Part shown: positions 19,232 through 37,001 of the stretch, piece after piece
Layout of the letters: the number at the start of each line of letters is the position of its first letter
How positions within the stretch are numbered: position 1 is the first letter of the stretch
Virus record (IMG/VR): IMGVR_UViG_3300042261_002385
Coordinates: 310,001 to 374,000 of that record
Strand: one strand, 5' to 3'
DNA length: 64,000 nt
The notes under the pieces: model-generated
What the model saw: only the letters and a program-made list of their open reading frames with translations
The model's database searches: none
Told to the model about the DNA's origin: nothing
Program-made: the position numbers and the translations under genes

Positions 19232-21862
19232 ATGGGCAAATTAGAGGCTAAAGGAACTTACATCAGTAAAATGAACTCCACTCAGAAAAAAAACATGGAT
19301 ATCATTATTCAAGTTTTTAAGGATGGAGGCGTAACTAATCCAATTTTTATTGCAGCTGTGCTTGGTATTGTAAGTAAAGAAAGTGCTTTTACAATTCAAA
19401 GAGAAAACATGAACTATACTACTGTAGCTCGATTACAGGAGGTCTTTGGATTAGACAAAACAAAAGCTTCTGAAATTGTCGGTAATGAAAAAGCTATCGC
19501 CAACTGGGTTTATGGGGCCAAACCACATGGTCGAAACAAATCACCACACATAGGTAATACAGGTGCGAATGATGGTTATAATTATAGAGGAGGTGGATTT
19601 AATGGAATTACTTTTAAGGCAGGTTATGAAAAATACTCGGATATAGCTGGATTTGATATGGTGAAAGATCCAGACAAAATTAATAACGCGGTAGTCTCCG
19701 CCAAAATTCTTTTAAAATATTATAGAAATACAGTTCCTCAAGTTGGAAAATCATATGGTAGTGCAACTATGAATGACTTTAAAAATTTAGAAGATGCAGT
19801 TTTGTGTGCATACCACTGCACTGCTGGAACAGGTAAAAAAGTTTCTAAAATTAAAGCCCTTCTTCTCAATGATTCATTAGGTGGAATGACAAAAGCACAA
19901 CATCGAAAAGAGGAATTCTATGAATATGTAAAAAAATTCGCAGGTCTTAAAGAACCATTGGGTGCTGTTTTATCCTCTGGCTCAAGTGGAAATGCTACTC
20001 CTGAAGTTCAAGGGGTCACAGCTTCGGAACAAACTCAACAACCAGCTTCTTTACCAGCACCTCCACCACCACCACCTGATCCACGAGCAGATGGTTATGT
20101 CAAACTTGAGAAAGTTTCAGGTCCAGGTGAGATGATGGGTGAGGTTGAAGCAGAAGTTATTTTTGGTGAAACCATTTTTAAAGGACTTCAATTTGATAAA
20201 GAAGGTGATTACGTTGTAAAGGCATATCACACATTTGAAGGAGTTGAACCATTAGAATTTTTAGTGAAAGTCCAACTTAATGAAAATCCACCCTCAACTG
20301 AAAAACCAACTCAAGAAGAAGAAACTGGAAAAAGACCAATTATTACGCAAATAGACCCACCAACAATTGCTTTAGCTCCAATTCAGATGCCTGTGCCCCA
20401 AGATTCAAACAAACAAGCAAACGCTGAAACACTAAAACAGATAGGTTTGACACCATTTATCTGGTACAATGGTTATCAAATAAAAGAGAATGATATTTAC
20501 TATTTAGTTTTATATTATAAAGGAATAGTTCCGGCAGTAGAAGTGAATTTTATAGACTCAGCAGCCATTCTTAAAAAGGTAGGTTTTCCAGGTTCTGATT
20601 CAACTTTTGATGTATTCATGAATTCTGGAAGTGCAGTTCTTAAGTCTATACACTTAAGAATGAAGATAGATAACTTTCAAGAAAACCCAAACAAAACATA
20701 TACGATGACAGGAACTCTTGATTTGAGAGACTTTTATAAAGTTAACTATAGATCTTGGACCGGAACGTCTTTTGAAGTTTTAAGACAAATGTGTAGTGAA
20801 CTTAAAATTGGATACAACTCTAACATTGATAAAACCGATGATAGTATGAAATGGACCAATACAGGTATGACCTGGAGAGAATTTATGGGTGATGTGATAA
20901 GACATTCTTATATCGCAGATGACTCTTTTACTCTAGCATACATCGATTTTTATTACTGTTTAAACTATGTAGATTTAGAGAAAGAGTGGAGAAGAGATGT
21001 TAGTGCTGACGTTGGTATATCATCAACAGGAACTTCACAAATTGATACTAAAACACCGGATGCTGATAAACTACTACCACTTGTTTTAATGAATGAGAAG
21101 TCTCAGAATAGTGCGAACACTTATTTCTTGAACTACTCTGTTCAAAATAACGCTACTAATAAAGCTATTTCAAATGGTCAATTTACTATAAGTAAATATT
21201 ATGATACTGCGACTAAACAGTTTTTGATTTTCAATGTAGACTCTCTTACGACTCAGGATGATTCCAAAATAATTCTTAAAGGAAAACCAGCAGATTCGAC
21301 GGAATTAGAAACAAACTATACGACTGTATTTGGAGGTAGAGTAGATTTATCTAATGTTCATAAAAACTATCTTTATGCGGATGTTTTAAACAGTAGAAAC
21401 TTGACCGATTTGAGTAAAATTGTAGTCACTTTAGAACTACCTCAATTAAATTTCAACTTGTACAAATTTCAAAAAATTAGAATTCAATTTATCAATGAAG
21501 CTCCAACAATCGCTGAAGAAGATTTAAACCAAAAGAGAATCAGTGGGGAGTGGATGATAGTTGATATAAAATTTTCATGGCAGGCATCCGGAACAAAAGG
21601 AGAAACAGTTCAAACCGTAACCGCAGTTAGAAAAGAATTAGAGAAAATTCCAGAAGACGGTGCCACAACCACTACACAAGAACAAGCAATTCTTAAAGAA
21701 GAAAATGTTAATGAGCTGGCTGTTGAGACACCACCAAATAGCAAATATAAAGTAGATGAAATCTACATTGTTCAAGACAAAGAAGGTAAAACATATGAAT
21801 TTACTGTGACTGAAATTTTAGAAAATGGAGTGGAAGTTAAAGGTTGGTTATATGAAGATTAA
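19232..21862 (+). CDS. Baseplate hub-like protein with N-terminal GH19-like lysozyme domain
   Basis: N-terminal SKESAF..RENMNY...ANWVYG...GNTGANDGYNYRGGG aligns with the GH19 endolysin at 62442; Pro-rich linker; C-terminal region resembles gp27/late-control-D hubs (SGEWMIVDIKF). Confidence 0.65.
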   Translation: MGKLEAKGTYISKMNSTQKKNMDIIIQVFKDGGVTNPIFIAAVLGIVSKESAFTIQRENMNYTTVARLQEVFGLDKTKASEIVGNEKAIANWVYGAKPHGRNKSPHIGNTGANDGYNYRGGGFNGITFKAGYEKYSDIAGFDMVKDPDKINNAVVSAKILLKYYRNTVPQVGKSYGSATMNDFKNLEDAVLCAYHCTAGTGKKVSKIKALLLNDSLGGMTKAQHRKEEFYEYVKKFAGLKEPLGAVLSSGSSGNATPEVQGVTASEQTQQPASLPAPPPPPPDPRADGYVKLEKVSGPGEMMGEVEAEVIFGETIFKGLQFDKEGDYVVKAYHTFEGVEPLEFLVKVQLNENPPSTEKPTQEEETGKRPIITQIDPPTIALAPIQMPVPQDSNKQANAETLKQIGLTPFIWYNGYQIKENDIYYLVLYYKGIVPAVEVNFIDSAAILKKVGFPGSDSTFDVFMNSGSAVLKSIHLRMKIDNFQENPNKTYTMTGTLDLRDFYKVNYRSWTGTSFEVLRQMCSELKIGYNSNIDKTDDSMKWTNTGMTWREFMGDVIRHSYIADDSFTLAYIDFYYCLNYVDLEKEWRRDVSADVGISSTGTSQIDTKTPDADKLLPLVLMNEKSQNSANTYFLNYSVQNNATNKAISNGQFTISKYYDTATKQFLIFNVDSLTTQDDSKIILKGKPADSTELETNYTTVFGGRVDLSNVHKNYLYADVLNSRNLTDLSKIVVTLELPQLNFNLYKFQKIRIQFINEAPTIAEEDLNQKRISGEWMIVDIKFSWQASGTKGETVQTVTAVRKELEKIPEDGATTTTQEQAILKEENVNELAVETPPNSKYKVDEIYIVQDKEGKTYEFTVTEILENGVEVKGWLYED

Positions 21863-21876
21863 AAATAAAATGTAGT

Positions 21877-22509
21877 ATGAAAAAGATAATTTCAAATTCG
21901 TTTAAGTGTGAAATAGGTGACTATAACTGTTTGCAAAATTTAGACCAAACAAATATAGATTCAAATGCTAATATGATTTCAAAAATAAACTCAGAATTGA
22001 AAAATTATTACAAAGAGTTGAAAAAAAATCCATACGTTTCTTCACTCAGAATAACAATAGATGATTTAAATTTTATTGTTAATTGGGAAGCTACAATTGA
22101 CGAAAGTCCAGACGGAAGGGCGTATATAGGATTGGCCTGTAGAGGAGCATCTGGTAAATCAGATGGAGTGGATGGATCCATACATAGAGCATTTATTAAA
22201 ACTGATTCTAAGAAAAAAAAATTACTTAGAGAAGTTTCAAAGAAAACAGAAATTGCAGACATAGCTGATTTCAATTTTCAAACCAAAACATCAGGTTTTA
22301 GTATACGACAAATATTTGTTATTTACACTAATCCAGAAATGTATCCTTACTTACCTAAATCACAAAATAAAAATTTTGTCGTTGGTAAAGTAATTGAAGC
22401 AGATCCAGATAAAATTGACAACAACGGTGAACTAATCTCTTCTCTTCATTCAGGAGAAGCTTATTCTCAGATAATGAATTCATTATTTAGAAGAAACAAA
22501 ACACAATAA
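21877..22509 (+). CDS. Hypothetical protein, homologous to the N-terminal domain of 22521..25712
   Basis: NPYVSSLRITID..FIVNWEATIDESPDGRAYIGL versus NPCITAIKLNVI..WTVEWEVTIEESPDGNAYVGL. Confidence 0.75.
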   Translation: MKKIISNSFKCEIGDYNCLQNLDQTNIDSNANMISKINSELKNYYKELKKNPYVSSLRITIDDLNFIVNWEATIDESPDGRAYIGLACRGASGKSDGVDGSIHRAFIKTDSKKKKLLREVSKKTEIADIADFNFQTKTSGFSIRQIFVIYTNPEMYPYLPKSQNKNFVVGKVIEADPDKIDNNGELISSLHSGEAYSQIMNSLFRRNKTQ

Positions 22510-22520
22510 TATATAATTCG

Positions 22521-25500
22521 ATGTCAGTTAAAGTAATTAGTGATAAATTTGGTGGTTTAGGAACAGCTTGTCAGGGTAGTTGGGATGCAATGCACACCTT
22601 TTCTACAAGAAAAATTGGTGGAAATTTTGGTAAAGATAAGTCAGGTGCAAGTCTTGACAAAGGAGGCCGAATGCACTCAAAAGTATCAGAAGCTCTTAAA
22701 GCCTTTTATAAAGACTATGGTCTCAATCCTTGTATAACCGCCATAAAACTTAATGTTATTGCTTCAACTTGGACAGTAGAGTGGGAGGTGACGATAGAGG
22801 AATCCCCTGACGGAAATGCATATGTTGGTTTAAATTCTTGGGGAGGAGCCAGTGGTGGTTACCCGTCAAAAAAACCACCGTCAGGACACGCTTATAGTAA
22901 TTATAAAACAAAAAGAAAAGAAATAGGAGCAACACCAGGTGTTGTTATTGCAGATGTTTTAGACTTTCATTTTCCAGGAGGTTTCCGTCAAATATTCTTT
23001 CAACATACGGATCCGAAATATCCAAATAAACCAAAATCTGCTAATGCTAAGATAGGAACTGTAGGTGTTCAAGTTGGACCAAGTGGTTCACCTAAAAACT
23101 TACCAGAATATAATAATACTGTAGTATACACAACTTCAATAACACCAGGAGCTGCTACATCTACAACGGCTACGACAACAGAAACTCAGGGTTCTACACA
23201 AAGTGCTGGTGCTACAGCAAAAGTAGGAACAGTAGATGGAACGTCTGTGAACACTGGTGGTAGTTTTGACTTTGTCACTTTAAAAGAGTGTTTTATAAGT
23301 GTTCCACCGAGACGAGGAGGAAGTGTTCCTATTTTTATCTATTATCCTAAAAATGAAATTTTTGAAACAGATTTTGAAAAAACAGAAAACATTTTTAAAT
23401 TTAGTATAGGTGAGGATAATGTAAAAGGAACACACTCCGGTATTAAGATGGCAAACCGAGTAATCGGTTTTGATAATAAATTTTTTAAATTAAACGATAA
23501 TAAAGTTGATGAACAGATTCTGGCTCAAACAGAGTCTCCAGTTAAAGACTGGTTTAATAAATATGTTAATGTTTTTGCAAATAATCCATACTCTGATTTT
23601 AATAAACTTGTTCAAGAGGTAGTTCAAGAGATTGAATCAAGAGCTCTTTTGCCATCATCTCTTAACTTATTTCTTTATGGTGAGTCAACTAACTCCGATA
23701 CTCCTGTAATGCAGGAGATTCCTAATCTTACAGCTAATATTAAAACAATAACTTTAATGGAGGCGGTTCCAACAGTAGAGTTAGTTGATATTGCGACAAA
23801 AATTAAAGCAGCTGGTGGTAAAGTTTATTACACCTATAATCCAAAGTTATTCAATATTGATTTAACCGACATCACATTAGTGACTTCAAATCCAACAGCG
23901 GCCACATACTCATTTAAAAATGGAACAATTGGTCAAAGTTCGGCTATGTTTCCTAACTCATCTCTTATTGGTTTCACACCGTCAGTTGTGTCTAATCCAG
24001 TCGCGTCAAACTCTGGGTTAACAACAAGTTTCTGGGATTTGACACTTCCAATCTCAGTAAATAAAAATGGAGCAAACTGGGAACTAAACTTTGGAGGAAC
24101 AATTGAATCAAAAGCAGTTTTAGCCACTGGACCGACTGGATCAGAAAATTATTTGGTTCCATTTCTACCTGGTGGACTTTATAATGGATTTTCACCACGA
24201 GGATTAGTATGGTTAGATGGCAAAGTAATTCACAAAGGGCCTAAAGTGACAAATGACTTGTCGGTTTATAGAAATTTCTTCAGTAGTATATCATATGAAG
24301 ATAAAGAATGGATTTTCACAACAACAGCGACAGCTTCAGGAACTGGTTCAACAGCAACACCTGCCATTGAAGAGCTTGGAGTAACTTTTTCATTTAGACA
24401 TAGAGGTCTAAAAGATACCTTAGTTCCATTTACTTACACAAAATTATCTGACGATTTAATAAAAGCAGGTGCTTACGTTTACGATTTATCTAAAGATGCT
24501 GCGTATAATAGAACAAGAGCGGGTGGAACAGGATCTGGCTGGCCAGAATTAATTCAACAACCACCTACACTACAAAGTGCAACTGGATCCAGTCAATCAG
24601 GATCTACTGCGTCAGGTGCTACAGTCTCTGCTACTGCAAGTTTTTCAATAAGATATTTAAATTTACAAAGCACCGAAGCTGAACTTAATATAGAAATAAC
24701 TCCACAATTAGCTTTACAAATATTTTCTTACGATATTGAAAGCATTGTTGGAAAAAGTGCCAATCCAAGCCAAACACCTGCTCAAATACCAAAAATAAGG
24801 GGACAATTCGTGTTTGATGTGAGGTATAAAGATAAACTAATAAACGATCAACTAGGTGAGTTTACGATAATAGAAAAAGTCGAAATAGATCCGTTCATAG
24901 TCACCACATCAGATGATATATCTGGACTAGATCCATCATTTTTAGAAGAAGCGTTCTCTGGAGAAGAGGAGTCACTAGATGATGATGTTCCATCAGATGA
25001 CCTTAAAACTTTTTTAGGTGAGTTATACAATGAAGAAGAAGCACAATTAGAACAAGAGGCTACTCAACAAGTATCTGCATCAACAAGTGGTTCTTCAACC
25101 CTGAGTGCAAGCGGACCTGAACAAGACATAAATTTACCTGGTAAAATCAAAGTGAATAGAAGTGATGCTGAAATTTTCTGGAGTCAATTAGCTGGATATA
25201 ATGGTAAAACTGAAATACCATCTGGTAGTAACGCAGGTGATCCGGTAGCAAGATTCTTAAAGGATGTTGGTTTAGGTGTTGGAAATCCGTGGTGTATGGC
25301 ATTTGTTTACTCACAGTTTAAAGAATTCTGTAATAAAAAAGGTCTTAAAAATCCATTACCTAAAACAGGTGGTTGTAAATATTTCTGGTCACAAGCACCG
25401 AAAGACTTTAAAATTTTAGCATCAGCTGCAGCCGCTAATCCAAAACTAATAAAAGGAGGGCAAATTTTTATTAAGTCGAGAGACGGTGGAGGACACACTG

Positions 25501-25712
25501 GTATAGTTCTTAAAGCTGATGGACCAAGCCACTTCTTATCAATAGACGGTAACTCATCAGATAAAGTTAGACTTAATAGATATCAAACATCTAGTATGAT
25601 GGGATTCATAGACTTTTTCTCAAATCCATACTTTCAAGATGCTGTAGAAGAATTAGCCACACCTCTTTTGAAATCAAGTAAAATTGAAAAAGGTGGAGGT
25701 AAAGAAACTTAA
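22521..25712 (+). CDS. Large tail-associated protein with C-terminal CHAP/NlpC-P60-type peptidoglycan hydrolase
   Basis: GNPWCMAFV...GQIFI...GGGHTGIV...SIDGNS (Cys/His catalytic pair); Thr/Ser/Ala-rich linkers. Confidence 0.75.
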   Translation: MSVKVISDKFGGLGTACQGSWDAMHTFSTRKIGGNFGKDKSGASLDKGGRMHSKVSEALKAFYKDYGLNPCITAIKLNVIASTWTVEWEVTIEESPDGNAYVGLNSWGGASGGYPSKKPPSGHAYSNYKTKRKEIGATPGVVIADVLDFHFPGGFRQIFFQHTDPKYPNKPKSANAKIGTVGVQVGPSGSPKNLPEYNNTVVYTTSITPGAATSTTATTTETQGSTQSAGATAKVGTVDGTSVNTGGSFDFVTLKECFISVPPRRGGSVPIFIYYPKNEIFETDFEKTENIFKFSIGEDNVKGTHSGIKMANRVIGFDNKFFKLNDNKVDEQILAQTESPVKDWFNKYVNVFANNPYSDFNKLVQEVVQEIESRALLPSSLNLFLYGESTNSDTPVMQEIPNLTANIKTITLMEAVPTVELVDIATKIKAAGGKVYYTYNPKLFNIDLTDITLVTSNPTAATYSFKNGTIGQSSAMFPNSSLIGFTPSVVSNPVASNSGLTTSFWDLTLPISVNKNGANWELNFGGTIESKAVLATGPTGSENYLVPFLPGGLYNGFSPRGLVWLDGKVIHKGPKVTNDLSVYRNFFSSISYEDKEWIFTTTATASGTGSTATPAIEELGVTFSFRHRGLKDTLVPFTYTKLSDDLIKAGAYVYDLSKDAAYNRTRAGGTGSGWPELIQQPPTLQSATGSSQSGSTASGATVSATASFSIRYLNLQSTEAELNIEITPQLALQIFSYDIESIVGKSANPSQTPAQIPKIRGQFVFDVRYKDKLINDQLGEFTIIEKVEIDPFIVTTSDDISGLDPSFLEEAFSGEEESLDDDVPSDDLKTFLGELYNEEEAQLEQEATQQVSASTSGSSTLSASGPEQDINLPGKIKVNRSDAEIFWSQLAGYNGKTEIPSGSNAGDPVARFLKDVGLGVGNPWCMAFVYSQFKEFCNKKGLKNPLPKTGGCKYFWSQAPKDFKILASAAAANPKLIKGGQIFIKSRDGGGHTGIVLKADGPSHFLSIDGNSSDKVRLNRYQTSSMMGFIDFFSNPYFQDAVEELATPLLKSSKIEKGGGKET

Positions 25713-25754
25713 TAAAAGTTGAATCACAAGCAAGTTTTATTTAATATATAAATC

Positions 25755-28700
25755 ATGGCAAATGGACTTTCGGCTGAAGATATAGAAAACTTACGTAAAG
25801 AGGGAATTTCAATCACGGATGTTAATGTTAATACAAACGGATTATCATTAACAGGAACTGCATTTAGTTCTCCTTTGGAGAAACAAAAATATGCAATATA
25901 CTCTGCCAGGTTAACACAACAGCAACTACAAAAGATTATTTCTTTGAATTCCGGTTCACCTTGGCCACAAACTCAATTGAACCCGGAGTTTAGTAGCACA
26001 ACTGGATTTCTACCATCTGTACTACTTCAACCAACTTTACAATCTAACCCAGTAAGCTCGCAATTTTCAGCTGGTAGAGATGCAACAGGTGATGTTAAAG
26101 TTACACAAACATATGCTAATTATAAATTTGTAGATTGGAGAGGTCAGCAACTAAGTTTTCCACCAAAATCTTTGACAACAGAAGATAGATTTTATGCAGG
26201 TAAAGATCTACCAAGAAATAGTCCAATTCTAGTAGACAAACCATACTCTATGAGAGATGTTCCTTTGATATTTGGAGATGGTAGAATGGATTACTTTAGA
26301 CATGGCTTACAAGTAATAGGTGACGGAAAGGCTGTAAGTAATTTGACTCCGATTGACAACAACGCTCTTGGAGCATCGAACCAAAGGTTAGCAAACTTTA
26401 AAGAAACTCCATGGGAAAATGAAGATCCACCGATGTTTGGATTTGATATAATCTTTGATTCTTTTTCTTCTCCATTATTAAATGGATCTTTGACCGACTT
26501 CATAGCAAACTATTCAAATGTAAGTGAGATTGCATCAAAAAGACAAGTCTATGAGGAATTTAAAAATCAGTTTCAGAAATTCTTTAGAATAAATGGTGAA
26601 ATGAAAGTTGACTCTACTCAGATTGCTATGACTTCTTTATATAGTACAGTAGCTGGTGCTGATTCAGCATCATCTATACATAATCCACATAAAAAAAATT
26701 ATTTAGGTCATTATGTGAAAAAAATCTCTGGTCTGGATTTTTTAATTGAACAGAATAAAGGAGATACAATCAAATACACACCAGACTACAAAAAAGACTT
26801 TATAACACTTCAATTACGAGAGGATGTCTCTATGAATATGGGTGTTTTAGCACATCTTTATAAAACACTATATTGGTCAAAGCCAAATGGAAAGATGTTA
26901 ATACCTGAAAATCTACTTAGATTTAACTGTATAATTATCATTTCAGAATGTAGAAACTTTCAAAGAGTAAAGAAAGGTATCAAAAACCCAGAAAATATAA
27001 ACATCATAAAAGACAATCTCTCAAGATATGTTTACACACTCAGAGAGTGTCAATTTTATTTTGACAAATTGCCTCTAAACAATGAGGTCGATTTAGGAGA
27101 CCAAGGACCTACTATGTATGAAAGTTATGATGTAAATTTTGACTTTAAGTATTCGAGTGTAAAACTCGAAAGATTTGTTCCAAATGGGGATTGGGGAAAT
27201 TATGTCGGTATAGATGGTGGTTCAATTTGGAAAGTTGGTAATAAAGGAACAAGAAATTCTAGAGGAACAACAGGATCTCAAGAATTATCAACTCCGAGAT
27301 TTTTCACCGTAGGTCCTGATAACGAAACTTACACATATTATCCAAACTTAAAAATAAATGGTGAAGAAAAACCATACATAATGGCTGTTTATGGACCTAA
27401 AGCCGACCAACAAGATGAATTTAATTTTGCACAAAAGAAAAGCTCTGAGGGAACTATTGGTGGTAATAACGAAGGATCAGGAGGTCAAAACGTGGGACAA
27501 TTAGGAGCTGGAAATGATGGAACTAATAATCAGACTTCTTCATCAACAACTGGAACTGAAGCTTCGGGTGGAGGAACACCAGGTAGTGGATTAACAAGTC
27601 CAAATGGATCTAAGGCAAGCACTAATGAGGGTTCCGCAGCCGGTGGTTCTTTAGACGCACTTAAAAGTCAATCTCAACAAGCATCCGAAAGCTCTAAACA
27701 ACAAGCTGAAATTACAGCGGTCCAAGATGCTACAAATTCACAGAAAAAAATGGCTTTTGGTTCGGTTAATGCCGCACTAGGTGATGTATCATTAAGTAAA
27801 ATCACAAAAACTGTTGCTACACCTTTAAATCAAGTAGTTGCCAATAAAAGCATATCTTCTGATATTGTTTCAGGTAAGTTTTTTGACAAAATGGGTAGTC
27901 TAAAATTAGAGGATAGTCTTAAAGGAATAAAAACTGGAGGACTTGCCAATTTAAGTAGTTTAGGTGAAAGTCTTAGCGGTTCTCTAAGTGGTTCTCTAAG
28001 TGGTGGTCTATCCGGACTTAAAAGCGCTATTCCTTCATTAGATTCAGTAAAAACTAAATTTTCAGAGGCTAAAAGTAAGGCTACTAGTGGATTTTTTGAT
28101 ATAAGAGGAAATCTTAAATCTAGCTTAACTGATGGTGTAAACAAAGCCGGTTCACTATTTAAGGGACTAAGCTCACAAGCTGACGGTTTATTAGGTGGTC
28201 TCGGAGGCCAAGCTAGTGGTTTACTAGGTGGCTTGTCAACACAATTAAAAGGAGGGCTTCCGTCTTTAGACTCCGTCAAAACTAAGTTTTCTTTAGCTAA
28301 AACTCAAGCTACTAGTGGTTTCTTTGATATCAGGGGAAATCTCAAATCTAGTCTTACTGAAGGAGCAGCCGGTTTAAAAACAAAAGCTGGTGGATTATTT
28401 GGAAATTTAGGCGGTCAAGCAGAGGGTCTGCTTGGTGGTCTGACCGACAAGGTAAAATCCGCTGTTCCATCTTTAGATTCAGTTAAAACTAAATTCTCAG
28501 CAGCTAAATCACAAGCTACTAGTGGATTCTTTGATATCAGGGGAAATCTCAAATCAAGTCTTACTGAAGGATCTGAAAAGTTGACAGGTGGTGGATTATT
28601 CTCAGGACTTAGTAAACAAACAGACGGTCTGTTATCTGGATTGACTGACAAAGTAAAATCATCCGTTCCATCCTTAGATTCAGTTAAGACTAAATTCTCT

Positions 28701-29213
28701 GCTGCAATTTCACAACCGACATCTAGTTTCTTTGATATAAGAGGAAATCTTAAGTCAACATTAACAGAAGGGGCCAATAAAATAATGACATCATTTGATC
28801 AGGCAGTCGATGATGCAAATTCTTTAACTGATCAAGTGAGTAAAAAGAAAAATGATACAATTAATTTAGTCAAAGGTTTACTAAACCAGGAAGTAGAGGA
28901 ATCAAAGTCAAATATTGGTAAATTCATAAGTGTTGATAGTCTAAAGGAAAAGTTCACAAATGCATCTGAAATTCCAAACAGTTCATTTTTTGATATCAGA
29001 AGTCAAATATCTGGAGAAAAAGGTAATGACACAAGTTCTTTGAACTTAAGAAAGAACCTTTTAAACAACACAATAGATAAAATATATAATACTAAAAATT
29101 CTTCAACCTCACCTATAAAATCAAATACACCACCAGCGACATCATTTTTTGACTTAAAAAATCAACTTAAAGATTTCCTCGGAGGAACCTTAGGTGACAA
29201 ACTAACTGAGTAA
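25755..29213 (+). CDS. Large structural protein (tail/baseplate-like N-terminal half, repetitive Gly/Ser/Leu-rich C-terminal half)
   Basis: 1152-aa ORF in the baseplate cluster, late promoter, overlaps the gp5-like gene. Confidence 0.65.
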   Translation: MANGLSAEDIENLRKEGISITDVNVNTNGLSLTGTAFSSPLEKQKYAIYSARLTQQQLQKIISLNSGSPWPQTQLNPEFSSTTGFLPSVLLQPTLQSNPVSSQFSAGRDATGDVKVTQTYANYKFVDWRGQQLSFPPKSLTTEDRFYAGKDLPRNSPILVDKPYSMRDVPLIFGDGRMDYFRHGLQVIGDGKAVSNLTPIDNNALGASNQRLANFKETPWENEDPPMFGFDIIFDSFSSPLLNGSLTDFIANYSNVSEIASKRQVYEEFKNQFQKFFRINGEMKVDSTQIAMTSLYSTVAGADSASSIHNPHKKNYLGHYVKKISGLDFLIEQNKGDTIKYTPDYKKDFITLQLREDVSMNMGVLAHLYKTLYWSKPNGKMLIPENLLRFNCIIIISECRNFQRVKKGIKNPENINIIKDNLSRYVYTLRECQFYFDKLPLNNEVDLGDQGPTMYESYDVNFDFKYSSVKLERFVPNGDWGNYVGIDGGSIWKVGNKGTRNSRGTTGSQELSTPRFFTVGPDNETYTYYPNLKINGEEKPYIMAVYGPKADQQDEFNFAQKKSSEGTIGGNNEGSGGQNVGQLGAGNDGTNNQTSSSTTGTEASGGGTPGSGLTSPNGSKASTNEGSAAGGSLDALKSQSQQASESSKQQAEITAVQDATNSQKKMAFGSVNAALGDVSLSKITKTVATPLNQVVANKSISSDIVSGKFFDKMGSLKLEDSLKGIKTGGLANLSSLGESLSGSLSGSLSGGLSGLKSAIPSLDSVKTKFSEAKSKATSGFFDIRGNLKSSLTDGVNKAGSLFKGLSSQADGLLGGLGGQASGLLGGLSTQLKGGLPSLDSVKTKFSLAKTQATSGFFDIRGNLKSSLTEGAAGLKTKAGGLFGNLGGQAEGLLGGLTDKVKSAVPSLDSVKTKFSAAKSQATSGFFDIRGNLKSSLTEGSEKLTGGGLFSGLSKQTDGLLSGLTDKVKSSVPSLDSVKTKFSAAISQPTSSFFDIRGNLKSTLTEGANKIMTSFDQAVDDANSLTDQVSKKKNDTINLVKGLLNQEVEESKSNIGKFISVDSLKEKFTNASEIPNSSFFDIRSQISGEKGNDTSSLNLRKNLLNNTIDKIYNTKNSSTSPIKSNTPPATSFFDLKNQLKDFLGGTLGDKLTE
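28026..28770 (+). repeat. Four ~70-75-aa coding repeats with core PSLDSVKTKFSxAxxxxTSxFFDIRGNLKSxLTEG
   Basis: Units start near 28026, 28257, 28461 and 28665; degenerate FFD(I/L/K) copies near 27880, 28985 and 29145. Confidence 0.92.
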
Positions 29214-31486
29214 TGAAAGATAGGAAAGTTGAACAGGGTAAAACCTATGTAGGAGTAGTTGAGGACAATCTAGACCCTGATAAGTTAGGTAGACTCAAAA
29301 TAAGAGTAGTGGATGTTTTTGATGAAGCAAAAGTTGAAGACTTACCATGGGCTTCACCTTGGAAAGATTTAGCTGGTGGTCAAATTGGTATACCAGAAAA
29401 AGGTAAAGTCGTTATATGTGTGTTTGAACAGGGTGATGCTTACAAACCAGAATACATATCAACAGAACACTGGAATATAAATCTTGAAAACAAACTAAAA
29501 GGTCTTTCAGATACAGATTACATTTCCATGAAGTCAGTTATATTTGACCACAAAACTCAAATATATTCTAATGATAGTGAAGGTCTAAAACTAGACTACA
29601 AGTTTAATAATGTAAATATCAAAAATAACGGCATAAATTTAAACTTAAAAGATAACTCAGGTTTAGTAAACATAGGAGATTCAACAGCTAATCAACAAGC
29701 TATTTTAGGAAATCACTTTCTAAATTGGTTTGATTCTTTTGTTGATGCTCTTATGAATAATACAGCATTTTTAGGAAACGCCGGAGCTCCAGTGTTGTCA
29801 AATCCAGCATTAGTAAGAATACTCAGCCAGTATAAATCACAAAAAGATTCTACATTTTTATCACATCATGTAAATTTTGTAGACAATAACAAAGTATCAA
29901 CCGTTAAATTAGAATCCAGAGAAGAAACACCCCAATCAGGTGACACTTGGCAATCTACAAAATCTGAAAACACACTCACTACAACTTCCACTGAAACGAA
30001 TAAACCAACTGACGGAGAAAAACCACCATACGATGAAAAGCATGTCGAGCCAGCAACCGATAAACCCGGTGTGCTACCAACTGAAGTTCCACCTGCTAAA
30101 GTTGTTGAACCACTTCCAGATAAAAGCCTACCAGAATCAAATAAAAAAGTCGAAAAACTCATCTGGTTTCTGAAAAGTAAAAATTATCAGATTTATGAAG
30201 TCAATTCACAAATCAATATGGTAGCCTTTAGATCGAAGAACAAAGTCAAAGATGATGAAAATACAAATATAACTAACTTATTCGATGAAGAACTTTGTGT
30301 TTTTTTCAAAAATGAAAATAATATTTGGGAACTATTTGAATATGCGATTACTACAGTTCCTGGTTATGTCCCGGCTAAAACAGAATTACCAGATAAAGTT
30401 GGAATACTAGCTCTGGGTCAGTATATAGAAAGGTTAAAAATGATTAATTATTTAGGAAATGCCTCATATCCCGCATTATCATTTGATGAGTGCTCGTTAC
30501 ATAGAAATGATAAATTAGATAGATACAATTTTGATGCACCAATCGAAACAGGAAACTTTGCAATGACAATTCATAGGTCCTCAGATGTAAATAGTAGTGA
30601 GTTTGTGTTCAATTATTCCGAAGGAGCTCAAGTTTTCAAAAACTTGAATCAATATGAACAATTCATTAAGATATGTCAAAAACAAATCGACAAAGGTGCA
30701 AAATCTACTTTTACATACACACTCTGCTCTAAAAAAGAATTTGAAGAATATGCTAGTCCGGATGAACAAAGAGAACTAGCTAAAACTTTACCCGCTACAC
30801 TGGAAACAACAACGGTTGCACCAACTGCTTCAACAGCCGTAGCAGCCACTCAAAGTCCACCAGCGAACGAATATAAAAAAGAAATGGAGTCTTTAATAAA
30901 GAGAAGGTTTGCTTCAGAGTCAGGTAAACCTGGAATAAAAAGTTTTATAGATAGATTTACCAAAGATGGTTCTAACTCGTTTGAGGTTAGTAAGTCAATC
31001 TCTTTTGCAGAGGGCATAGGTCGCAAAAATATTGAAGAATTAAATAAAAGTATGTTAGGTTTATCTAAATCAGAAATAGGAGATAATACTATTAAATATT
31101 TGGTTTTAAAAAGAATCTATCCAAAACTGAAAAAAGAACTTCAAAATCACATCAATTATTTAATCAAAAAAGGTAAACTCGATGAAAAAGATTATTACTA
31201 TGTTACTGATGGAAAAAGGTCTATTGAGAAAGGATTATATGTCTGGAGAGTTTCATTCAAAAAAAATCCGGATCCTAAAGCTCCACCAACAACCAATCCG
31301 TTTATCTTACCAAATCTATTATCTGAAACGACTTTTATAGGATTGACTAAGACTTATACTAATTTAAGACTACCAAGTGGTCAATTGCAACCTGATAAAC
31401 CGTCAAAGAATAATAGTTGGGTTCTAGAAGACACAGATCCACCGTTATATTTTGTTGAAATAAAATTTGTTCCATTTACAAAATAA
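29213..31486 (+). CDS. gp5/Vgr-like baseplate spike (OB-fold) fused to a YkuD-like domain and an unknown C-terminal domain
   Basis: YVGVVEDNLDPDKLGRLKIRV...DLPWASP...IPEKG..V...FEQGD..KP.Y OB-fold; middle ITTVPG...GQY...TIHR...YSEGAQVF. Confidence 0.78.
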   Translation: MKDRKVEQGKTYVGVVEDNLDPDKLGRLKIRVVDVFDEAKVEDLPWASPWKDLAGGQIGIPEKGKVVICVFEQGDAYKPEYISTEHWNINLENKLKGLSDTDYISMKSVIFDHKTQIYSNDSEGLKLDYKFNNVNIKNNGINLNLKDNSGLVNIGDSTANQQAILGNHFLNWFDSFVDALMNNTAFLGNAGAPVLSNPALVRILSQYKSQKDSTFLSHHVNFVDNNKVSTVKLESREETPQSGDTWQSTKSENTLTTTSTETNKPTDGEKPPYDEKHVEPATDKPGVLPTEVPPAKVVEPLPDKSLPESNKKVEKLIWFLKSKNYQIYEVNSQINMVAFRSKNKVKDDENTNITNLFDEELCVFFKNENNIWELFEYAITTVPGYVPAKTELPDKVGILALGQYIERLKMINYLGNASYPALSFDECSLHRNDKLDRYNFDAPIETGNFAMTIHRSSDVNSSEFVFNYSEGAQVFKNLNQYEQFIKICQKQIDKGAKSTFTYTLCSKKEFEEYASPDEQRELAKTLPATLETTTVAPTASTAVAATQSPPANEYKKEMESLIKRRFASESGKPGIKSFIDRFTKDGSNSFEVSKSISFAEGIGRKNIEELNKSMLGLSKSEIGDNTIKYLVLKRIYPKLKKELQNHINYLIKKGKLDEKDYYYVTDGKRSIEKGLYVWRVSFKKNPDPKAPPTTNPFILPNLLSETTFIGLTKTYTNLRLPSGQLQPDKPSKNNSWVLEDTDPPLYFVEIKFVPFTK

Positions 31487-31528
31487 TCATTTTCACCATT
31501 TAATATATAAAAATAAAAACTAATAAAA

Positions 31529-31783
31529 ATGGATAATCCTAGATATTTAGTAAATATAGTTTATGTTCCTGCTAGACATACTGGTCAGCAGAAAATCACA
31601 GTTAATGGAGTAACTCAATCGATGCCTACCTACTCTACAGAGATGTTTGTGGCTTCTATGCCAGAGATTAGAATTGCTGCTTCTGGTTCAACTTATCAAA
31701 CAGCGTTGAGTAATTTATTATTGATAGCTACTTCTTCCACCACACCATCTAATGGTTATGGGCCTCTTGGTGGTTATAGATAA
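31529..31783 (+). CDS. Small hypothetical late protein
   Basis: 84-aa ORF with TAATATATA upstream. Confidence 0.65.
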   Translation: MDNPRYLVNIVYVPARHTGQQKITVNGVTQSMPTYSTEMFVASMPEIRIAASGSTYQTALSNLLLIATSSTTPSNGYGPLGGYR

Positions 31784-31785
31784 TT

Positions 31786-34008
31786 TTATGGCTTAAATAA
31801 ATCAGTTCCATTGTATTCCCAATGCCAAGGTTCATATCCAGCACCGGCTTTTTTAGCCCAGTTTGGATTAATCCAGCCATATTTTTTTGCATTAGCTTCC
31901 ATCCAGTCGAAATATTGATTGCCTGGACCATTTCCAAAACCACCAATATCTACTGCTTGACCCCAACCATGTTTTGATGTTCCTGGAGGAGCAGCCGCTA
32001 CACCTGTTGGTTTTTTAGCATTAAACGATCCGACTTTTCTACCTTTATTTTTAGGATCGACTTTTTTGGTATATGGATTTAATCCAGTATCATAATAGTC
32101 CCAATCAAAAATTTTGTTCTGAACGTTAAATGTTCTGTATCCATCAGTTATTTTCATGTCTTTACCAAACTGGGCTTTATAAGCTTTGTTTAGTTCATTA
32201 AGTTTCTTTACAGCATTTTTTTCTATCTTGTGACCACAGAAGTCTAATTTTGTTAACAAATTACTTGGTAAATCACCATTAAAAACTGTTCTACCTTGGA
32301 CAGTAAGTTTTTGTTGAAACCTCTTTTGTCCAGAACCACCTCCCTTAGAGGCACTGTCCGTAGCTGTTTTTGCCGACACCTCAACTTCTGGAGTTCCCGT
32401 AGACGCAGTTTCTGCTGCGACAGTAGAAGTTCCTTCAGTTGTTGTAGAACCTTCAGTCTCTTCTTCTAATCCACCAGATTCTCCGAAGGCACTTTGCTCA
32501 GCGTCATTTAAATTAAAGTCAATCTGTTCATCCTCACCGACGAAAGCTTCCTCTAAAAACTCAGGAGATAATCCAGATAAGTCATCAGCTTCATCACTGA
32601 ATATAAATCCTTCTACCGGAACGTCGGCTTCTATATCACCAACCCATATTTGAAATTGAGGAGCAGGCTCATCAGTTTTTACGATCCAATTCTCAGGAAA
32701 CACTGGATTCATTTTTATCAAAACTACCGGTTCACTTTGTGTAGCTGCAATTGCCGCTGATCCACTTCCACCAGTAGCAGGATTTGGAGTAAGAACGTTC
32801 GGATTATCTCCAACTGTTTCCCACTTGAAAGCCTTCCCAGAATCTGTAAAGGACTTTTTAGGTGAATAATCATTTATCAAATCGGTCTCTGGATATGTGT
32901 AACTAGGAACTGCTAACCTTAAGTTATAACTTTTAGCTGAAGGATATGAGGTCGCTAATGACTTAACCCAATTTTCTATTACATTATTTACTATAAATTC
33001 ATCTTTCACTTCATAGCTAAATGTGATAGACAATGGTATTGTAGAATTTGTTATACCACCGGCAAACTCTAAAACATATCTCGGATTGTATTTATCATCA
33101 AATGACCAAAATCTTTCAAACTCCTCATCACCTTCATCATCAGCAGATGGTTGCACCACTGGATTAGGAACAACATAAAAACTTTTGAAAATATAATTTG
33201 GAGTATTCACTTCTTTTAAAGATTCATCTGAATATTCGTAACCTGAAATATTTCTGGTAAAACTCGACGGCCCAGTTTTCGGTAGAGTTAAATCTACAGA
33301 CACACCGGAAACAGAAATCACATAGTCTCCTGTGCCTTGTTCAAAGCCATCATTTAGTGCACTATTTTGAGCGTGCGCTAATGCACTACTAAGTGTATAG
33401 GTATTTGAAAGTGTTACTCCATAAAACTCATCGATACTACCTGTTCCGGTAGATGTTTTATAGTTTAATTCAAAAAAATTAGGAAGTTCTACATCTATAT
33501 CAGCTGGTGATAATCCATCAAGTAAAATCGCTGTGTCAACCAGAATCTTAGTCGGATCAGAAGCTGTTCCATTTCCATAAACTTCATATGCTTCAAATTG
33601 ATAAGTTATTTCTAGATTTTTTCTCCAAGAAATATTAATATAAGCTCCATTATTTAAGTAATATGGATCCTCTCCGAATTTTCTCAACTGAGGAACGTCA
33701 TCAGCCCAAGGATTCTGAACTATTTTAAATAAGTTCGGTCCTAATTTTGAACCTATTTTATTAGCCTCGAATTCCGAATTACTACTAATATACTCTTGTA
33801 TAATTTCGTCATTAGTTTTGGTTTGATATCTCTCACCGTCGTAAATTACTTCTTGCCAATACAACTGACCACTCAGTGAAACTTTACCAACAGCTATTCT
33901 TTGTGAGTTTGACGCTGTTCCTTGTAATAGCATTACTCTTAAATCCAGAGCACCGGTGTTTGCACCTTCTACTATTTTTCTAACTCTTACTTGTTTTAAT
34001 GTATCCAT
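31786..34008 (-). CDS. Large tail-associated protein with C-terminal M15 (VanY-like) Zn D-Ala-D-Ala peptidase
   Basis: ITDGYRTF..Q...AAPPGTSKHGWGQAVDI...YGW...EPWHWEY. Confidence 0.85.
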   Translation of the reverse strand: MDTLKQVRVRKIVEGANTGALDLRVMLLQGTASNSQRIAVGKVSLSGQLYWQEVIYDGERYQTKTNDEIIQEYISSNSEFEANKIGSKLGPNLFKIVQNPWADDVPQLRKFGEDPYYLNNGAYINISWRKNLEITYQFEAYEVYGNGTASDPTKILVDTAILLDGLSPADIDVELPNFFELNYKTSTGTGSIDEFYGVTLSNTYTLSSALAHAQNSALNDGFEQGTGDYVISVSGVSVDLTLPKTGPSSFTRNISGYEYSDESLKEVNTPNYIFKSFYVVPNPVVQPSADDEGDEEFERFWSFDDKYNPRYVLEFAGGITNSTIPLSITFSYEVKDEFIVNNVIENWVKSLATSYPSAKSYNLRLAVPSYTYPETDLINDYSPKKSFTDSGKAFKWETVGDNPNVLTPNPATGGSGSAAIAATQSEPVVLIKMNPVFPENWIVKTDEPAPQFQIWVGDIEADVPVEGFIFSDEADDLSGLSPEFLEEAFVGEDEQIDFNLNDAEQSAFGESGGLEEETEGSTTTEGTSTVAAETASTGTPEVEVSAKTATDSASKGGGSGQKRFQQKLTVQGRTVFNGDLPSNLLTKLDFCGHKIEKNAVKKLNELNKAYKAQFGKDMKITDGYRTFNVQNKIFDWDYYDTGLNPYTKKVDPKNKGRKVGSFNAKKPTGVAAAPPGTSKHGWGQAVDIGGFGNGPGNQYFDWMEANAKKYGWINPNWAKKAGAGYEPWHWEYNGTDLFKP

Positions 34009-34541: not shown

Positions 34542-34543
34542 TT

Positions 34544-36577: not shown

Positions 36578-36611
36578 ATTTCAAATAAATTATTTTAGAT
36601 TATATATTAAA

Positions 36612-37001
36612 TTAATAGTCTCTTATGATTTGAGAATTTGAAAATTTTGACAAATTTCCTAAGACGTCGTCCATAACGTCTGGACTTTTTCTAAACTCAT
36701 TGTAGAATATCAGAACGTTAAAATTATTTTCACCAAGTATTTTTTTGAGATTTAATAGTTTTTCAATCGAAAACTCCTGGTCAAAGTCAGGAATGTAATA
36801 AATATCTTTCTTTTTGTCTATTGCTTGTTGTATTTTGTTAAAGATAATTATTTTGAGATAAGTTTTATCATTTCTAAAATCGACCTCTTCTTCGTCTATA
36901 ATCTTTTTAATATCAATTATATACTTATTCTTTATTCGATTAACTTTGATGAATTTATCAAATTTCTTCCTCGTTTTACAATAGACACAAAAGAATTCCA
37001 T
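36612..37001 (-). CDS. Hypothetical protein
   Basis: 129-aa ORF with TATATA upstream. Confidence 0.65.
   Translation of the reverse strand: MEFFCVYCKTRKKFDKFIKVNRIKNKYIIDIKKIIDEEEVDFRNDKTYLKIIIFNKIQQAIDKKKDIYYIPDFDQEFSIEKLLNLKKILGENNFNVLIFYNEFRKSPDVMDDVLGNLSKFSNSQIIRDY

What the first reader, a model, noticed from the sequence alone, without database searches (positions are those of the whole stretch)
19232..34008. Baseplate cluster in which four large proteins each carry a different peptidoglycan-active domain
Seen: GH19-like on the hub (both Glu of the endolysin's HES and SEN positions kept as KES and REN), CHAP on the 1063-aa protein, YkuD-like on the gp5-like spike, and M15 peptidase on the 740-aa protein. 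A CTS-tagged GH108 and a GH19 endolysin lie elsewhere. T4 has one tail lysozyme, on gp5. Inference: a multi-enzyme drilling apparatus that cuts both glycan and peptide bonds.
Basis: partly seen in the sequence, partly recalled or inferred. Interest (0 to 1): 0.6.

Follow-up and report, generated by a model that had tools for sequence, protein, structure and literature searches.

The report
Megaphage baseplate with tethered wall enzymes
An uncultured 436-kb freshwater phage encodes, next to its tail-tip hub and spike, three probably active cell-wall-cutting domains and a fourth that has lost its catalytic cysteine; this is an elaborate variant of the known "tail lysin" theme, not a new kind of machine.

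Summary
The 876-aa protein is a true gp27-type baseplate hub by fold (Z 21.5). Its N-terminus carries a GH19-like lysozyme domain that keeps both catalytic Glu (E50, E58). The 757-aa protein is a gp5/gpV-type spike. The 1063-aa protein ends in a CHAP-type Cys-His domain (C925, H992). The 740-aa protein ends in a VanY/M15 zinc peptidase with every motif intact.

The spike's middle domain does have the YkuD fold: the top 20 structural matches are all YkuD-fold enzymes. It reads H454-x14-S-E-G-A472 where the family has Cys. That Cys was lost once, in a clade of 15 relatives where the His also decays. It is most likely a pseudoenzyme. So three enzymes are probable, not four.

New here: the 1063-aa and 740-aa proteins share a conserved acidic junction motif (...SGL-P-F-LEE-F-GEEE) just before the enzyme. 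In relatives, eight different wall-hydrolase families sit behind that motif, which indicates cassette exchange.

Only gene position and one domain fusion suggest that these two carriers sit in the virion. A multi-enzyme hub is already known from cyanophage A-1(L). Verdict: real, partly as interpreted, a new variant of a known kind.

The parts
19232..21862 (+). Baseplate hub protein, 876 aa (P0001). Layout: N-terminal GH19-like domain, Pro-rich tether, small beta domain, gp27-like hub core, small C-terminal beta domain.
19283..19831 (+). GH19-like lysozyme domain of the hub (aa ~18-200). It has catalytic Glu E50 (KES) and E58 (REN) and the motif YRGGGFNGITF, which keeps the Thr but has Gly for the canonical Gln.
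20429..21640 (+). gp27/gpD/Mu gp44-like hub core (aa ~400-803).
   Evidence: AF2 model pLDDT 73. VIA Z 21.5 to the phage P1 hub, 16.3 to Mu gp44, 16.0 to the pyocin R2 hub. Foldseek to T4 gp27 E about 1e-11.
21877..22509 (+). 210-aa protein (P0282), a paralogue of the N-terminal domain of the 1063-aa protein. Function unknown.
   Evidence: BLASTP 36% identity over 140 aa, E 1e-24
22521..25712 (+). 1063-aa carrier protein (P0002). Layout: N-domain X (aa 1-217), unknown middle region, junction motif, Ser/Thr-rich tether, CHAP domain.
24879..24980 (+). Conserved acidic junction motif (aa 787-820: ...DDISGLDPSFLEEAFSGEEE...).
25278..25553 (+). CHAP / TIGR02594-like Cys-His peptidase-amidase domain (aa 920-1011). 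C925, H992 and N1011 are invariant.
25755..29213 (+). 1152-aa protein (P0005). It has a conserved N-terminal part (aa ~66-543) and a conserved C-terminus. The internal region holds about six diverged ~33-aa repeats that are absent from the 584-638-aa orthologues. Role unknown; it lies directly upstream of the spike.
29213..31486 (+). Central spike protein, 757 aa (P0003). Layout: gp5/gpV OB domain with short spike (aa 1-240), Thr/Pro tether, YkuD-fold domain, and a C-terminal extension (aa 530-757) of unknown function.
30134..30772 (+). YkuD-fold domain of the spike (aa ~308-520). It has H454 (nt 30572-30574) but Ala472 (nt 30626-30628) at the nucleophile Cys position. Probable pseudoenzyme.
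31529..31783 (+). 84-aa protein that always follows the spike gene in relatives. Function unknown.
31786..34008 (-). 740-aa carrier protein (P0004). Layout: unknown N-terminal region, junction motif, acidic/Thr-rich tether, VanY (M15B) domain.
32518..32622 (-). Junction motif of the 740-aa protein (aa 463-497: ...DDLSGLSPEFLEEAFVGEDE...).
31807..32232 (-). VanY / M15B zinc peptidase domain (aa 593-734). Residues H680, D687, E726, H729.
34011..37001 (-). Three conserved neighbours (176, 677 and 129 aa). In LR756502 they lie directly upstream of the hub gene on the same strand. Functions unknown. They are part of the conserved tail-tip module by synteny only.
53684..54694 (+). 336-aa GH108 protein with a hydrophobic segment at aa ~94-113. 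Outside the cluster.
62442..63272 (+). Canonical endolysin: PG_binding_1 + GH19 (HES...SEN).

Best explanation
This is the central tail-tip (hub and spike) gene cluster of an uncultured freshwater megaphage with a contractile tail.

The trimeric gp27-like hub carries a GH19-like muramidase or chitinase-type domain on a roughly 90-residue Pro-rich tether. The gp5/gpV-like spike carries, on a Thr/Pro tether, a YkuD-fold module that has lost its catalytic Cys. That module most likely now binds peptidoglycan stem peptides or has a structural role rather than cutting.

Two accessory proteins (1063 and 740 aa) each consist of a carrier part, a conserved acidic junction motif, a low-complexity tether and a terminal peptidoglycan peptidase or amidase (CHAP-type Cys-His; VanY/M15 zinc).

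On tail contraction the hub-spike complex crosses the outer membrane. The tethered enzymes then open the wall locally: the glycan strands by the GH19-like domain, and the stem peptides or amide bonds by the CHAP and M15 domains. This lets the tube reach the inner membrane.

The enzyme modules are exchangeable cassettes, and the junction motif marks the swap point.

Shown: domain identities, catalytic residues, hub and spike folds, loss of the Cys, cassette diversity. Inferred: enzymatic activity, bond specificity, virion location of the two carriers, and the role of the motif.
For: Hub fold: VIA Z 21.5 (P1 hub), 19.5, 18-19 (PVC/AFP/AlgoCIS), 16.3 (Mu gp44); Foldseek to T4 gp27 E about 1e-11.

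Spike: Phage_base_V 1.6e-7 and PHROG 430.

GH19-like domain. Both Glu are invariant across 30 hub homologues.

CHAP. C, H and N are invariant, and the domain (78-98% identity) is more conserved than the carrier (66-83%).

VanY: 1e-20 with all Zn and catalytic motifs.

YkuD fold: top 20 structural matches. The family consensus is HRA-x-WSAGCQVF. Cys is present in 122 of 148 family representatives, and in 111 of 121 that are not fused to a spike. P0003 has Ala. The loss is a single change on the tree, in a clade of 15 with SH-aLRT 98.

Modularity. Hub homologues carry GH19, SLT or nothing. In LR756502 the GH19-like domain sits at the hub's C-terminus, and in LR745206 it is absent. Close relatives of the 1063-aa protein carry CHAP, Peptidase_C39_2 or VanY. 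A 40%-identical relative of the 740-aa protein carries GH24. Of 30 motif-bearing or positionally equivalent proteins, 21 hit GH19, VanY, SLT, CHAP, C39_2, Phage_lysozyme2 or DUF1287, and the motif residues are the only near-invariant columns. P0321 (1063-aa family) has the motif and downstream sequence of a subclade of the 740-aa family.

The N-domain of the 1063-aa protein is fused to the hub in other phages at 53% identity.

Precedent: the hub of cyanophage A-1(L) has lysozyme, endoglucanase and peptidase domains, two of them active in assays (PMC10966104).
Against: There is no proteomic or structural evidence that the 1063-aa and 740-aa proteins are in the virion. Their carrier regions match no known family.

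CHAP sits only at Pfam's threshold, and a narrow profile found no solved CHAP structure.

The hub's GH19-like domain is below Pfam's GH19 threshold. In this phage it has Gly where canonical GH19 has the substrate-binding Gln.

No activity was measured.

The neighbouring conserved genes (176, 677, 129, 84 and 1152 aa) could not be assigned to baseplate parts.
Confidence: 0.6

Rival explanations
1. The 1063-aa and 740-aa proteins are not baseplate-bound. They would be ejected cargo stored in the tail lumen or capsid, or soluble late proteins that act in lysis. The junction motif would be a proteolytic maturation site that frees the enzyme.
For: The motif contains L-E-E followed by A or S. From my own knowledge of phage maturation proteases, this resembles (L/I)-x-E cleavage sites. 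A ClpP-type protease gene lies two genes upstream of the hub. The carrier regions have no recognisable structural fold. LR756502 has the conserved hub-spike module without these two genes in the cluster.
Against: A separate canonical endolysin (PG_binding_1 + GH19) and a GH108 protein already exist for lysis. The genes are embedded in the hub-spike module in several relatives. The N-domain of the 1063-aa protein occurs fused to hubs. Neither protein has the N-terminal tag seen on the GH108 protein.
Confidence: 0.2
2. One reading: all four domains, including the YkuD-like one, are active enzymes that together form a four-enzyme drill.
For: The fold is YkuD. H454 is retained, and the domain is conserved at 40-65% identity within the clade. 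In some relatives Ser replaces Cys and could in principle act as a nucleophile.
Against: P0003 has Ala at the nucleophile position. Within the same clade the position drifts among S, A, T, N and D, and the His is replaced in 8 of the 27 spike-fused representatives (7 of them in this Cys-less clade). This is the pattern of relaxed constraint on catalysis. Family members that are not fused to a spike keep Cys in 111 of 121 cases.
Confidence: 0.07
3. The enzyme-like domains serve mainly as peptidoglycan-binding or adhesion modules, or are dispensable passengers that are gained and lost neutrally. They would not be required wall-cutting activities.
For: Presence and type of the domains vary freely between related phages. 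The LR745206 hub has none. From my own knowledge, tail lysins are often conditionally dispensable in laboratory infections.
Against: Catalytic residues of the GH19-like, CHAP and VanY domains are strictly conserved across diverged homologues, while the surrounding sequence varies. In the one case where catalysis was lost (YkuD-like), the residues visibly decay, which shows what relaxation looks like in this system.
Confidence: 0.08

Closest known systems
Cyanophage A-1(L) baseplate hub gp15 (PDB 8kea; PMC10966104)
   Same: A gp27-like hub barrel decorated with several cell-wall hydrolase domains (lysozyme, endoglucanase, peptidase). The hub core of the present protein matches 8kea_A at Z 18.1.
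   Different: In A-1(L) all the domains sit in one hub polypeptide. Here they are spread over the hub, the spike and two separate carrier proteins. The enzyme families differ (GH19-like, CHAP, VanY), and a conserved junction motif marks exchangeable cassettes.
T4 gp27-gp5 cell-puncturing device
   Same: A hub (gp27 fold) plus a spike with an N-terminal OB domain and a wall-directed domain inserted after it.
   Different: T4 gp5 carries an active GH24 lysozyme. Here the spike's domain has the YkuD fold and lacks its Cys, and GH24 is absent from the genome. The glycosidase is on the hub instead.
Virion-associated peptidoglycan hydrolases of Gram-positive phages (TP901-1/Tuc2009 Tal, phage K/phi812 tail lysins, phi29 gp13) - from my own knowledge
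   Same: Tail-tip structural proteins that end in CHAP, M23 or lysozyme domains. They are modular, and some are proteolytically processed at a linker.
   Different: Those phages infect thick-walled hosts. Here the predicted host group is Gram-negative, probably Bacteroidota (inferred from relatives only). The number of separate carriers and the shared junction motif are not described for those phages.
Evolved VgrG spikes and cargo effectors of type VI secretion (e.g. V. cholerae VgrG-3) - from my own knowledge
   Same: A gp27/gp5-like spike with a C-terminal peptidoglycan-directed extension, plus separately encoded exchangeable effectors. The hub model matches VgrG structures.
   Different: This is a phage, not a secretion system. 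No adaptor or PAAR logic was shown here. Whether the motif is a loading signal is unknown.
YkuD-fold L,D-transpeptidases and L,D-carboxypeptidases (Csd6, Pgp2, LdtMt2, Tlde1)
   Same: The fold matches (Z 5.4-8.5), and so does the signature spacing H-x14-[S]-x-G-[C].
   Different: Sequence similarity is below Pfam detection. The phage family (consensus HRA...WSAGCQVF...FTYTL) is a separate, mostly viral lineage. Some members are fused to PG_binding_1 or annotated 'lysin'. This member has Ala for Cys.

Membership tests
GH19 (chitinase / phage endolysin family) | Significant match to the family model (Pfam PF00182 gathering score) | tested here: not met
   There is no PF00182 hit on the 876-aa protein. 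Homology is only transitive: PHROG 181 at 4e-20, solved GH19 endolysins at 1e-4 to 1e-3, and the window's own GH19 endolysin at 9e-9. So the domain is 'GH19-like', not a certified member.
GH19 (chitinase / phage endolysin family) | General acid and general base Glu pair (HES...xEN in phage enzymes) | tested here: met
   E50 (KES) and E58 (REN) are invariant in 30 hub homologues and align with the Glu pair of 4ok7 and 9ms6.
GH19 (chitinase / phage endolysin family) | GRG-x-IQ(L/I)(S/T) substrate and water-positioning motif | tested here: inconclusive
   The motif reads YRGGGFNGITF. The Thr is kept, the second Arg is Gly, and Gln is Gly in this phage, although most hub homologues have NQLT.
CHAP (PF05257) / NlpC-P60 superfamily | Match at Pfam gathering score (26 bits) | tested here: inconclusive
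   The six-frame scan gives 26.0 bits. Protein scans give 21.4 and 24.5 bits. TIGR02594 gives 1.9e-5. Relatives have precomputed PF05257. A narrow profile found no solved CHAP structure.
CHAP (PF05257) / NlpC-P60 superfamily | Catalytic Cys and His (plus a polar third residue) | tested here: met
   C925 (PWCMAFV), H992 (GGGHTGIV) and N1011 (DGNSS) are invariant in 9 relatives.
YkuD / L,D-transpeptidase fold | YkuD beta-sandwich catalytic fold | tested here: met
   AF2 pLDDT is 90.4. The VIA wide search has ranks 1-20 all YkuD-fold (Z 8.5-5.4), and the next row is at Z 2.8. The Foldseek top hit is 8qzg, E 3e-3.
YkuD / L,D-transpeptidase fold | Catalytic motif H-x14-17-[S/T]-x-G-C with a nucleophilic Cys | tested here: not met
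   The motif reads H454-x14-S469-E-G-A472, so Cys is replaced by Ala. The loss is shared by a clade of 15.
YkuD / L,D-transpeptidase fold | Match to Pfam PF03734 | tested here: not met
   There is no hit in the whole genome at E<=10. Only 1 of 60 family members reaches 0.0045.
Peptidase M15B (VanY, PF02557) | Match above the gathering score | tested here: met
   74.3-78.5 bits against a cut-off of 25. Solved VanY-type carboxypeptidases match at 2e-10.
Peptidase M15B (VanY, PF02557) | Zn ligands H-x6-D and H, and catalytic Glu (SxHxxGxAxD, ExxH) | tested here: met
   S678-K-H680-GWGQAV-D687 and E726-PW-H729 align with 5hnm and 6a6a.
gp27 / gpD / Mu gp44 baseplate hub | Hub fold (tandem tube-like beta-barrel domains) | tested here: met
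   Z is 21.5 to the P1 hub, 16.3 to Mu gp44 and 16.0 to the pyocin R2 hub. T4 gp27 matches at Foldseek E about 1e-11. The match covers about 400 residues.
gp27 / gpD / Mu gp44 baseplate hub | Forms a trimer that seats the spike | not testable with these tools
   This needs cryo-EM or biochemistry.
gp5 / gpV central spike | N-terminal OB domain (Phage_base_V) | tested here: met
   PF04717 at 1.6e-7, 32 bits against a cut-off of 23.8. PHROG 430 at 1.6e-14.
gp5 / gpV central spike | T4-type GH24 lysozyme domain | tested here: not met
   PF00959 is absent from the genome. The inserted domain has the YkuD fold.

The most novel reading that the evidence does not exclude
The conserved acidic junction motif (F-x-F-x-D-D-...-S-G-L-x-P-E/S-F-L-E-E-x-F-x-G-E-E-E) would be a dedicated docking or processing signal. 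It would define a previously undescribed cargo system of megaphage baseplates. Any of at least eight muralytic enzyme families could then be plugged behind it and delivered at the tail tip, as happens with exchangeable T6SS or eCIS effectors. The Cys-less YkuD module on the spike would have been repurposed as a peptidoglycan-stem-peptide anchor.
Probability: 0.2. Interest if true: 0.65.

Novelty: new variant of a known kind. Interest (0 to 1): 0.42.

Why it matters
The result extends virion-associated wall hydrolases to uncultured megaphages of freshwater, whose hosts are probably Bacteroidota.

It defines a mostly viral YkuD-fold lysin family that Pfam does not cover. That family is repeatedly fused to gp5-like spikes, and a sizeable share of the spike fusions (roughly four in ten to six in ten in the two samples examined) have lost the catalytic Cys.

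It also identifies a short conserved junction motif behind which GH19, SLT, GH24, Phage_lysozyme2, VanY, M15_4, CHAP and C39-like domains are exchanged.

The motif is a practical handle for mining tail lysins from metagenomes and for engineering chimeric lysins. The dead YkuD module is a clean natural example of an enzyme turning into a non-catalytic virion part.

It does not overturn current views of how contractile tails cross the wall.

Tried and rejected
(a) Nucleotide search of the region against GenBank phages found no match. Only protein-level relatives exist.

(b) Sequence-only searches of the spike's middle domain against PDB, Pfam and NCBIfam were blank. The fold had to be predicted.

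(c) A sequence profile of the hub core against PDB was blank; the fold search solved it. A narrow CHAP profile against PDB was blank.

(d) Searches of the spike's C-terminal extension and of the 1063-aa protein's N-domain against PDB found nothing. The Atlas model of the 210-aa paralogue is too poor to use (pLDDT 0.33).

(e) Hypothesis: loss of the spike's Cys is compensated by gaining motif-linked peptidases. Rejected, because loci L023, L032 and L039 have a Cys-bearing spike together with two motif proteins, and many Cys-less loci show no motif hit. The motif HMM is weak for distant loci.

(f) look-up of encoding contigs for four spike relatives returned only 2.7-6.4-kb contigs, useless for synteny. 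It was replaced by 80 IMG/VR loci.

(g) The 'CTS tag' on the GH108 protein: the N-terminal Y-N-E-F-L-L-E motif recurs only once more in the genome, weakly. It is not treated as a targeting signal. The protein has a hydrophobic segment instead.

(h) complex prediction of the hub core with the spike N-terminus gave no verdict (score 0.04). It is not used as evidence either way.

(i) Tandem Repeats Finder sees no DNA-level array in the 1152-aa gene. The protein repeats are diverged.

(j) No alternative genetic code was needed.
Full report
CONTEXT

The window is bases 310001-374000 of a 436,265-bp IMG/VR virus record with about 30% G+C. Its nearest named relatives, at protein level only, are the 634-735-kb uncultured 'huge phage' assemblies LR745206, LR756502, LR756501/3 and LR756504. 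Near-identical DNA occurs in lake, river and drinking-water metagenomes from at least 14 studies. All ORFs discussed are intact under table 11, so no other code was invoked.

OBSERVATION

The four ORFs are at the stated coordinates.

(i) The 876-aa protein (P0001, 19232-21862+).
- Residues ~18-200 match PHROG 181 'endolysin' (4e-20).
- They also match solved GH19 phage endolysins and a GH19 chitinase (9ms6 1e-4, 4ok7 1e-3, 2cjl 0.26), and the window's own Pfam-positive GH19 endolysin (9e-9).
- Pfam's GH19 model itself does not reach the domain.
They are invariant in 30 diverged hub homologues.
- The downstream GH19 motif reads YRGGGFNGITF. The Thr is kept, and Gly replaces the canonical Gln.

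(ii) The 1063-aa protein (P0002, 22521-25712+).
- It ends in a CHAP/TIGR02594-like domain that scores exactly at Pfam's threshold.
- C925, H992 and N1011 are invariant. The domain is more conserved (78-98% identity) than its carrier (66-83%).

(iii) The 740-aa protein (P0004, 31786-34008-).
- It ends in a clear VanY/M15B domain (1e-20).
- It has S-x-H680-x6-D687 and E726-x2-H729.

(iv) The 757-aa protein (P0003, 29213-31486+).
- It has the gp5/gpV OB domain.
- Its middle domain (aa ~308-520) matched nothing in Pfam, NCBIfam or PDB by sequence.

THE SPIKE'S MIDDLE DOMAIN

An exhaustive search found 533 relatives. Most are ~200-aa stand-alone viral proteins, and others are C-terminal fusions. 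The family consensus is ...GINIHRA-x(8-10)-WSAGCQVF...FTYTL.

An AlphaFold model built on that alignment has pLDDT 90.4. In a Foldseek-independent search of 48,161 chains, ranks 1-20 are all YkuD-fold enzymes: Pgp2 Z 8.5, Csd6 8.4, a 1,3-L,D-transpeptidase 8.1, Bd1075, several Ldt enzymes, DpaA, and Tlde1a at 5.7. The next row is at Z 2.8. Foldseek agrees weakly. So 'YkuD-like' is right as a fold.

Some family members carry PG_binding_1 or are annotated 'lysin'. This fits a lysin family that Pfam does not cover.

P0003 reads H454-x14-S469-E-G-A472, which is the YkuD signature spacing with Ala in place of the nucleophilic Cys.
- Among 148 family representatives, 122 have Cys.
- Among members not fused to a spike, 111 of 121 have Cys.
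- Among 27 spike-fused representatives, the position is C in 11, S in 9, A in 3, T in 2, N in 1 and D in 1. The His is replaced in 8.
- On a maximum-likelihood tree the loss is a single change. It defines a clade of 15 (SH-aLRT 98) that contains P0003, and the sister lineages keep His and Cys.
- LR756502's spike keeps both residues. LR745206's has lost both.

This is the pattern of a domain retained for a non-catalytic role.

IS IT A BASEPLATE CLUSTER?

Yes, for the hub and the spike. A model of P0001 aa 290-876 (pLDDT 73) matches gp27-type hubs over about 400 residues:
- phage P1 hub, Z 21.5
- Klebsiella phage KP1, Z 19.5
- PVC, AFP and AlgoCIS spike-hubs, Z 18-19
- cyanophage A-1(L), Z 18.1
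- Mu gp44, Z 16.3
- pyocin R2 hub, Z 16.0
- T4 gp27, Foldseek E about 1e-11

In LR756502 the conserved module runs 129 aa, 624 aa, 152 aa, hub, 584 aa, spike, 89 aa on one strand. In this phage and in LR745206, the part with the 740-aa gene's family plus the 176/677/129-aa genes is inverted downstream of the spike. The 84-, 129-, 176-, 677- and 1152-aa proteins could not be assigned.

THE TWO CARRIER PROTEINS AND THE JUNCTION MOTIF

P0002 and P0004 are otherwise unrelated. They share a 35-residue stretch (54% identity) immediately upstream of the low-complexity tether that precedes the enzyme domain. It occurs nowhere else in the genome.

The motif is conserved in the following:
- most listed relatives of both families, including every motif-containing relative of the 740-aa protein at 70% identity or more
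- a 40%-identical relative whose cargo is GH24 lysozyme
- LR745206's two positional equivalents, which carry a Cys-His amidase-like domain and a Peptidase_M15_4 domain

In a forced alignment of 30 such proteins from IMG/VR loci, the motif residues are the only invariant or near-invariant columns apart from the start Met. Of those 30 proteins, 21 hit wall-hydrolase families: GH19 in 8, VanY in 3, SLT in 3, CHAP in 3, Peptidase_C39_2 in 2, Phage_lysozyme2 in 1 and DUF1287 in 1.

Close relatives of P0002 (66-83% identical carriers) end in CHAP, C39_2 or VanY. One of them, P0321, has the motif and downstream sequence typical of a subclade of the other family. This indicates cassette exchange at the motif.

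The hub behaves in the same way. Its homologues carry GH19, SLT, both an N-terminal GH19-like and a C-terminal canonical GH19 domain, or nothing. In LR756502 the GH19-like domain sits at the C-terminus.

The N-terminal domain of P0002 (aa 1-217) is 53% identical to the N-terminal domain of some hubs. It has a stand-alone paralogue next door, the 210-aa protein. This fusion is the only evidence, beyond gene position, that links P0002 physically to the hub.

MECHANISM: SHOWN VERSUS INFERRED

Shown:
- a gp27-like hub and a gp5/gpV-like spike
- three hydrolase domains with intact and conserved catalytic residues
- one YkuD-fold domain without its nucleophile
- a low-complexity tether of 40-90 residues before every one of these domains
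- exchangeable cassettes

Inferred: after contraction, the hub-spike complex brings tethered enzymes into the periplasm. There a glycosidase (GH19-like) and two peptidases or amidases (CHAP, M15) open the wall locally, while the Cys-less YkuD module binds stem peptides or acts structurally.

Bond specificities cannot be read from family membership. From my own knowledge, VanY-type domains in phage lysins are often L-Ala-D-Glu endopeptidases rather than D,D-carboxypeptidases.

The role of the motif (docking, processing or merely a recombination joint) is open. The virion location of the two carriers is unproven.

COMPARISON AND NOVELTY

Tail-tip lysins are well known, and T4 is not the right yardstick. 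The A-1(L) hub has lysozyme, endoglucanase and peptidase domains, two of which are active in assays (PMC10966104). Myophages of Gram-positive hosts carry several tail lysins (my own knowledge).

YkuD-type domains are rare among catalogued phage lytic proteins: 10 entries in PhaLP's table (PMC8310338).

New here:
- the spread of the domains over four proteins in a megaphage
- the junction motif with eight or more cargo families
- the viral YkuD-fold family and its catalytic death on the spike

This makes it a new variant of a known kind.

REPERTOIRE

In the 436-kb genome the only VanY and CHAP hits lie in this cluster. SLT, GH24, M23 and Pfam YkuD are absent. The canonical endolysin (GH19 + PG_binding_1) and a GH108 protein lie 20-30 kb downstream.

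LIMITS

- Nothing was assayed.
- The motif HMM is insensitive for distant loci.
- A complex prediction for hub plus spike gave no verdict and is not used.

Noticed in passing
window 25755-29213 (+): The 1152-aa protein holds about six diverged repeats of a ~33-aa unit (SLDSVKTKFS-AKS-ATSGFFDIRGNLKSSLTEG) between conserved N- and C-terminal parts. Orthologues in LR756502 and LR745206 are only 584 and 638 aa and lack the repeat block. No DNA-level tandem repeat remains. It could be a length-determining or tube-lumen protein.
   Followed up: partly
window 21877-22509 (+), 22521-23171 (+): A domain of unknown function (signature W-E-x-T-I-E/D-E-S-P-D-G-x-A-Y-x-G-L) occurs three ways. It stands alone as the 210-aa protein, it forms the N-terminus of the 1063-aa protein, and in other phages it forms the N-terminus of the hub, where this phage has the GH19-like domain. 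It may be another wall-directed module.
   Followed up: partly
window 36612-37001 (-): The 129-aa protein is 88-89% identical to its orthologues in LR756502 and LR745206, whereas neighbouring structural genes are 40-55% identical. It matches no family. The reason for this unusual conservation is unexplained.
   Followed up: no
window 53684-54694 (+): The GH108 protein has a 160-aa N-terminal extension. The N-terminal motif recurs only once more in the genome, weakly.
   Followed up: partly
window 16455-17138 (+) and 17514-19202 (+): A ClpP-family protease (PF00574, 1e-64; PHROG 'head maturation protease') and a UvsW-like DEAD-box helicase lie directly upstream of the hub gene. The arrangement is conserved in both megaphage relatives.
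   Followed up: no
window 13674-14585 (+): An HNH/homing-endonuclease-like gene (PHROG 559, 7e-36) lies close to the structural cluster.
   Followed up: no
window 31786-37001 versus L003 (LR756502 90393-121898): The block of 176/677/129-aa genes is inverted relative to LR756502, where it lies upstream of the hub on the same strand. The 740-aa gene sits at the inversion boundary.
   Followed up: partly
hub homologues P0174, P0176, P0178, P0182, P0185: Some hub homologues (~1070 aa) carry two glycosidase domains at once: the N-terminal GH19-like type and a C-terminal canonical GH19. Others carry SLT (PF01464).
   Followed up: partly
whole record G000: IMG/VR labels this 436-kb, 95%-complete record a 'provirus'. 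Nothing in the window suggests integration, and the record's ends were not examined.
   Followed up: no
window 29213-31486, aa 530-757: The spike has a 230-aa C-terminal extension that is absent from the 504-508-aa orthologues of LR756502 and LR745206 but present, with variable length, in closer relatives (695-857 aa). It matches no family or solved structure.
   Followed up: partly
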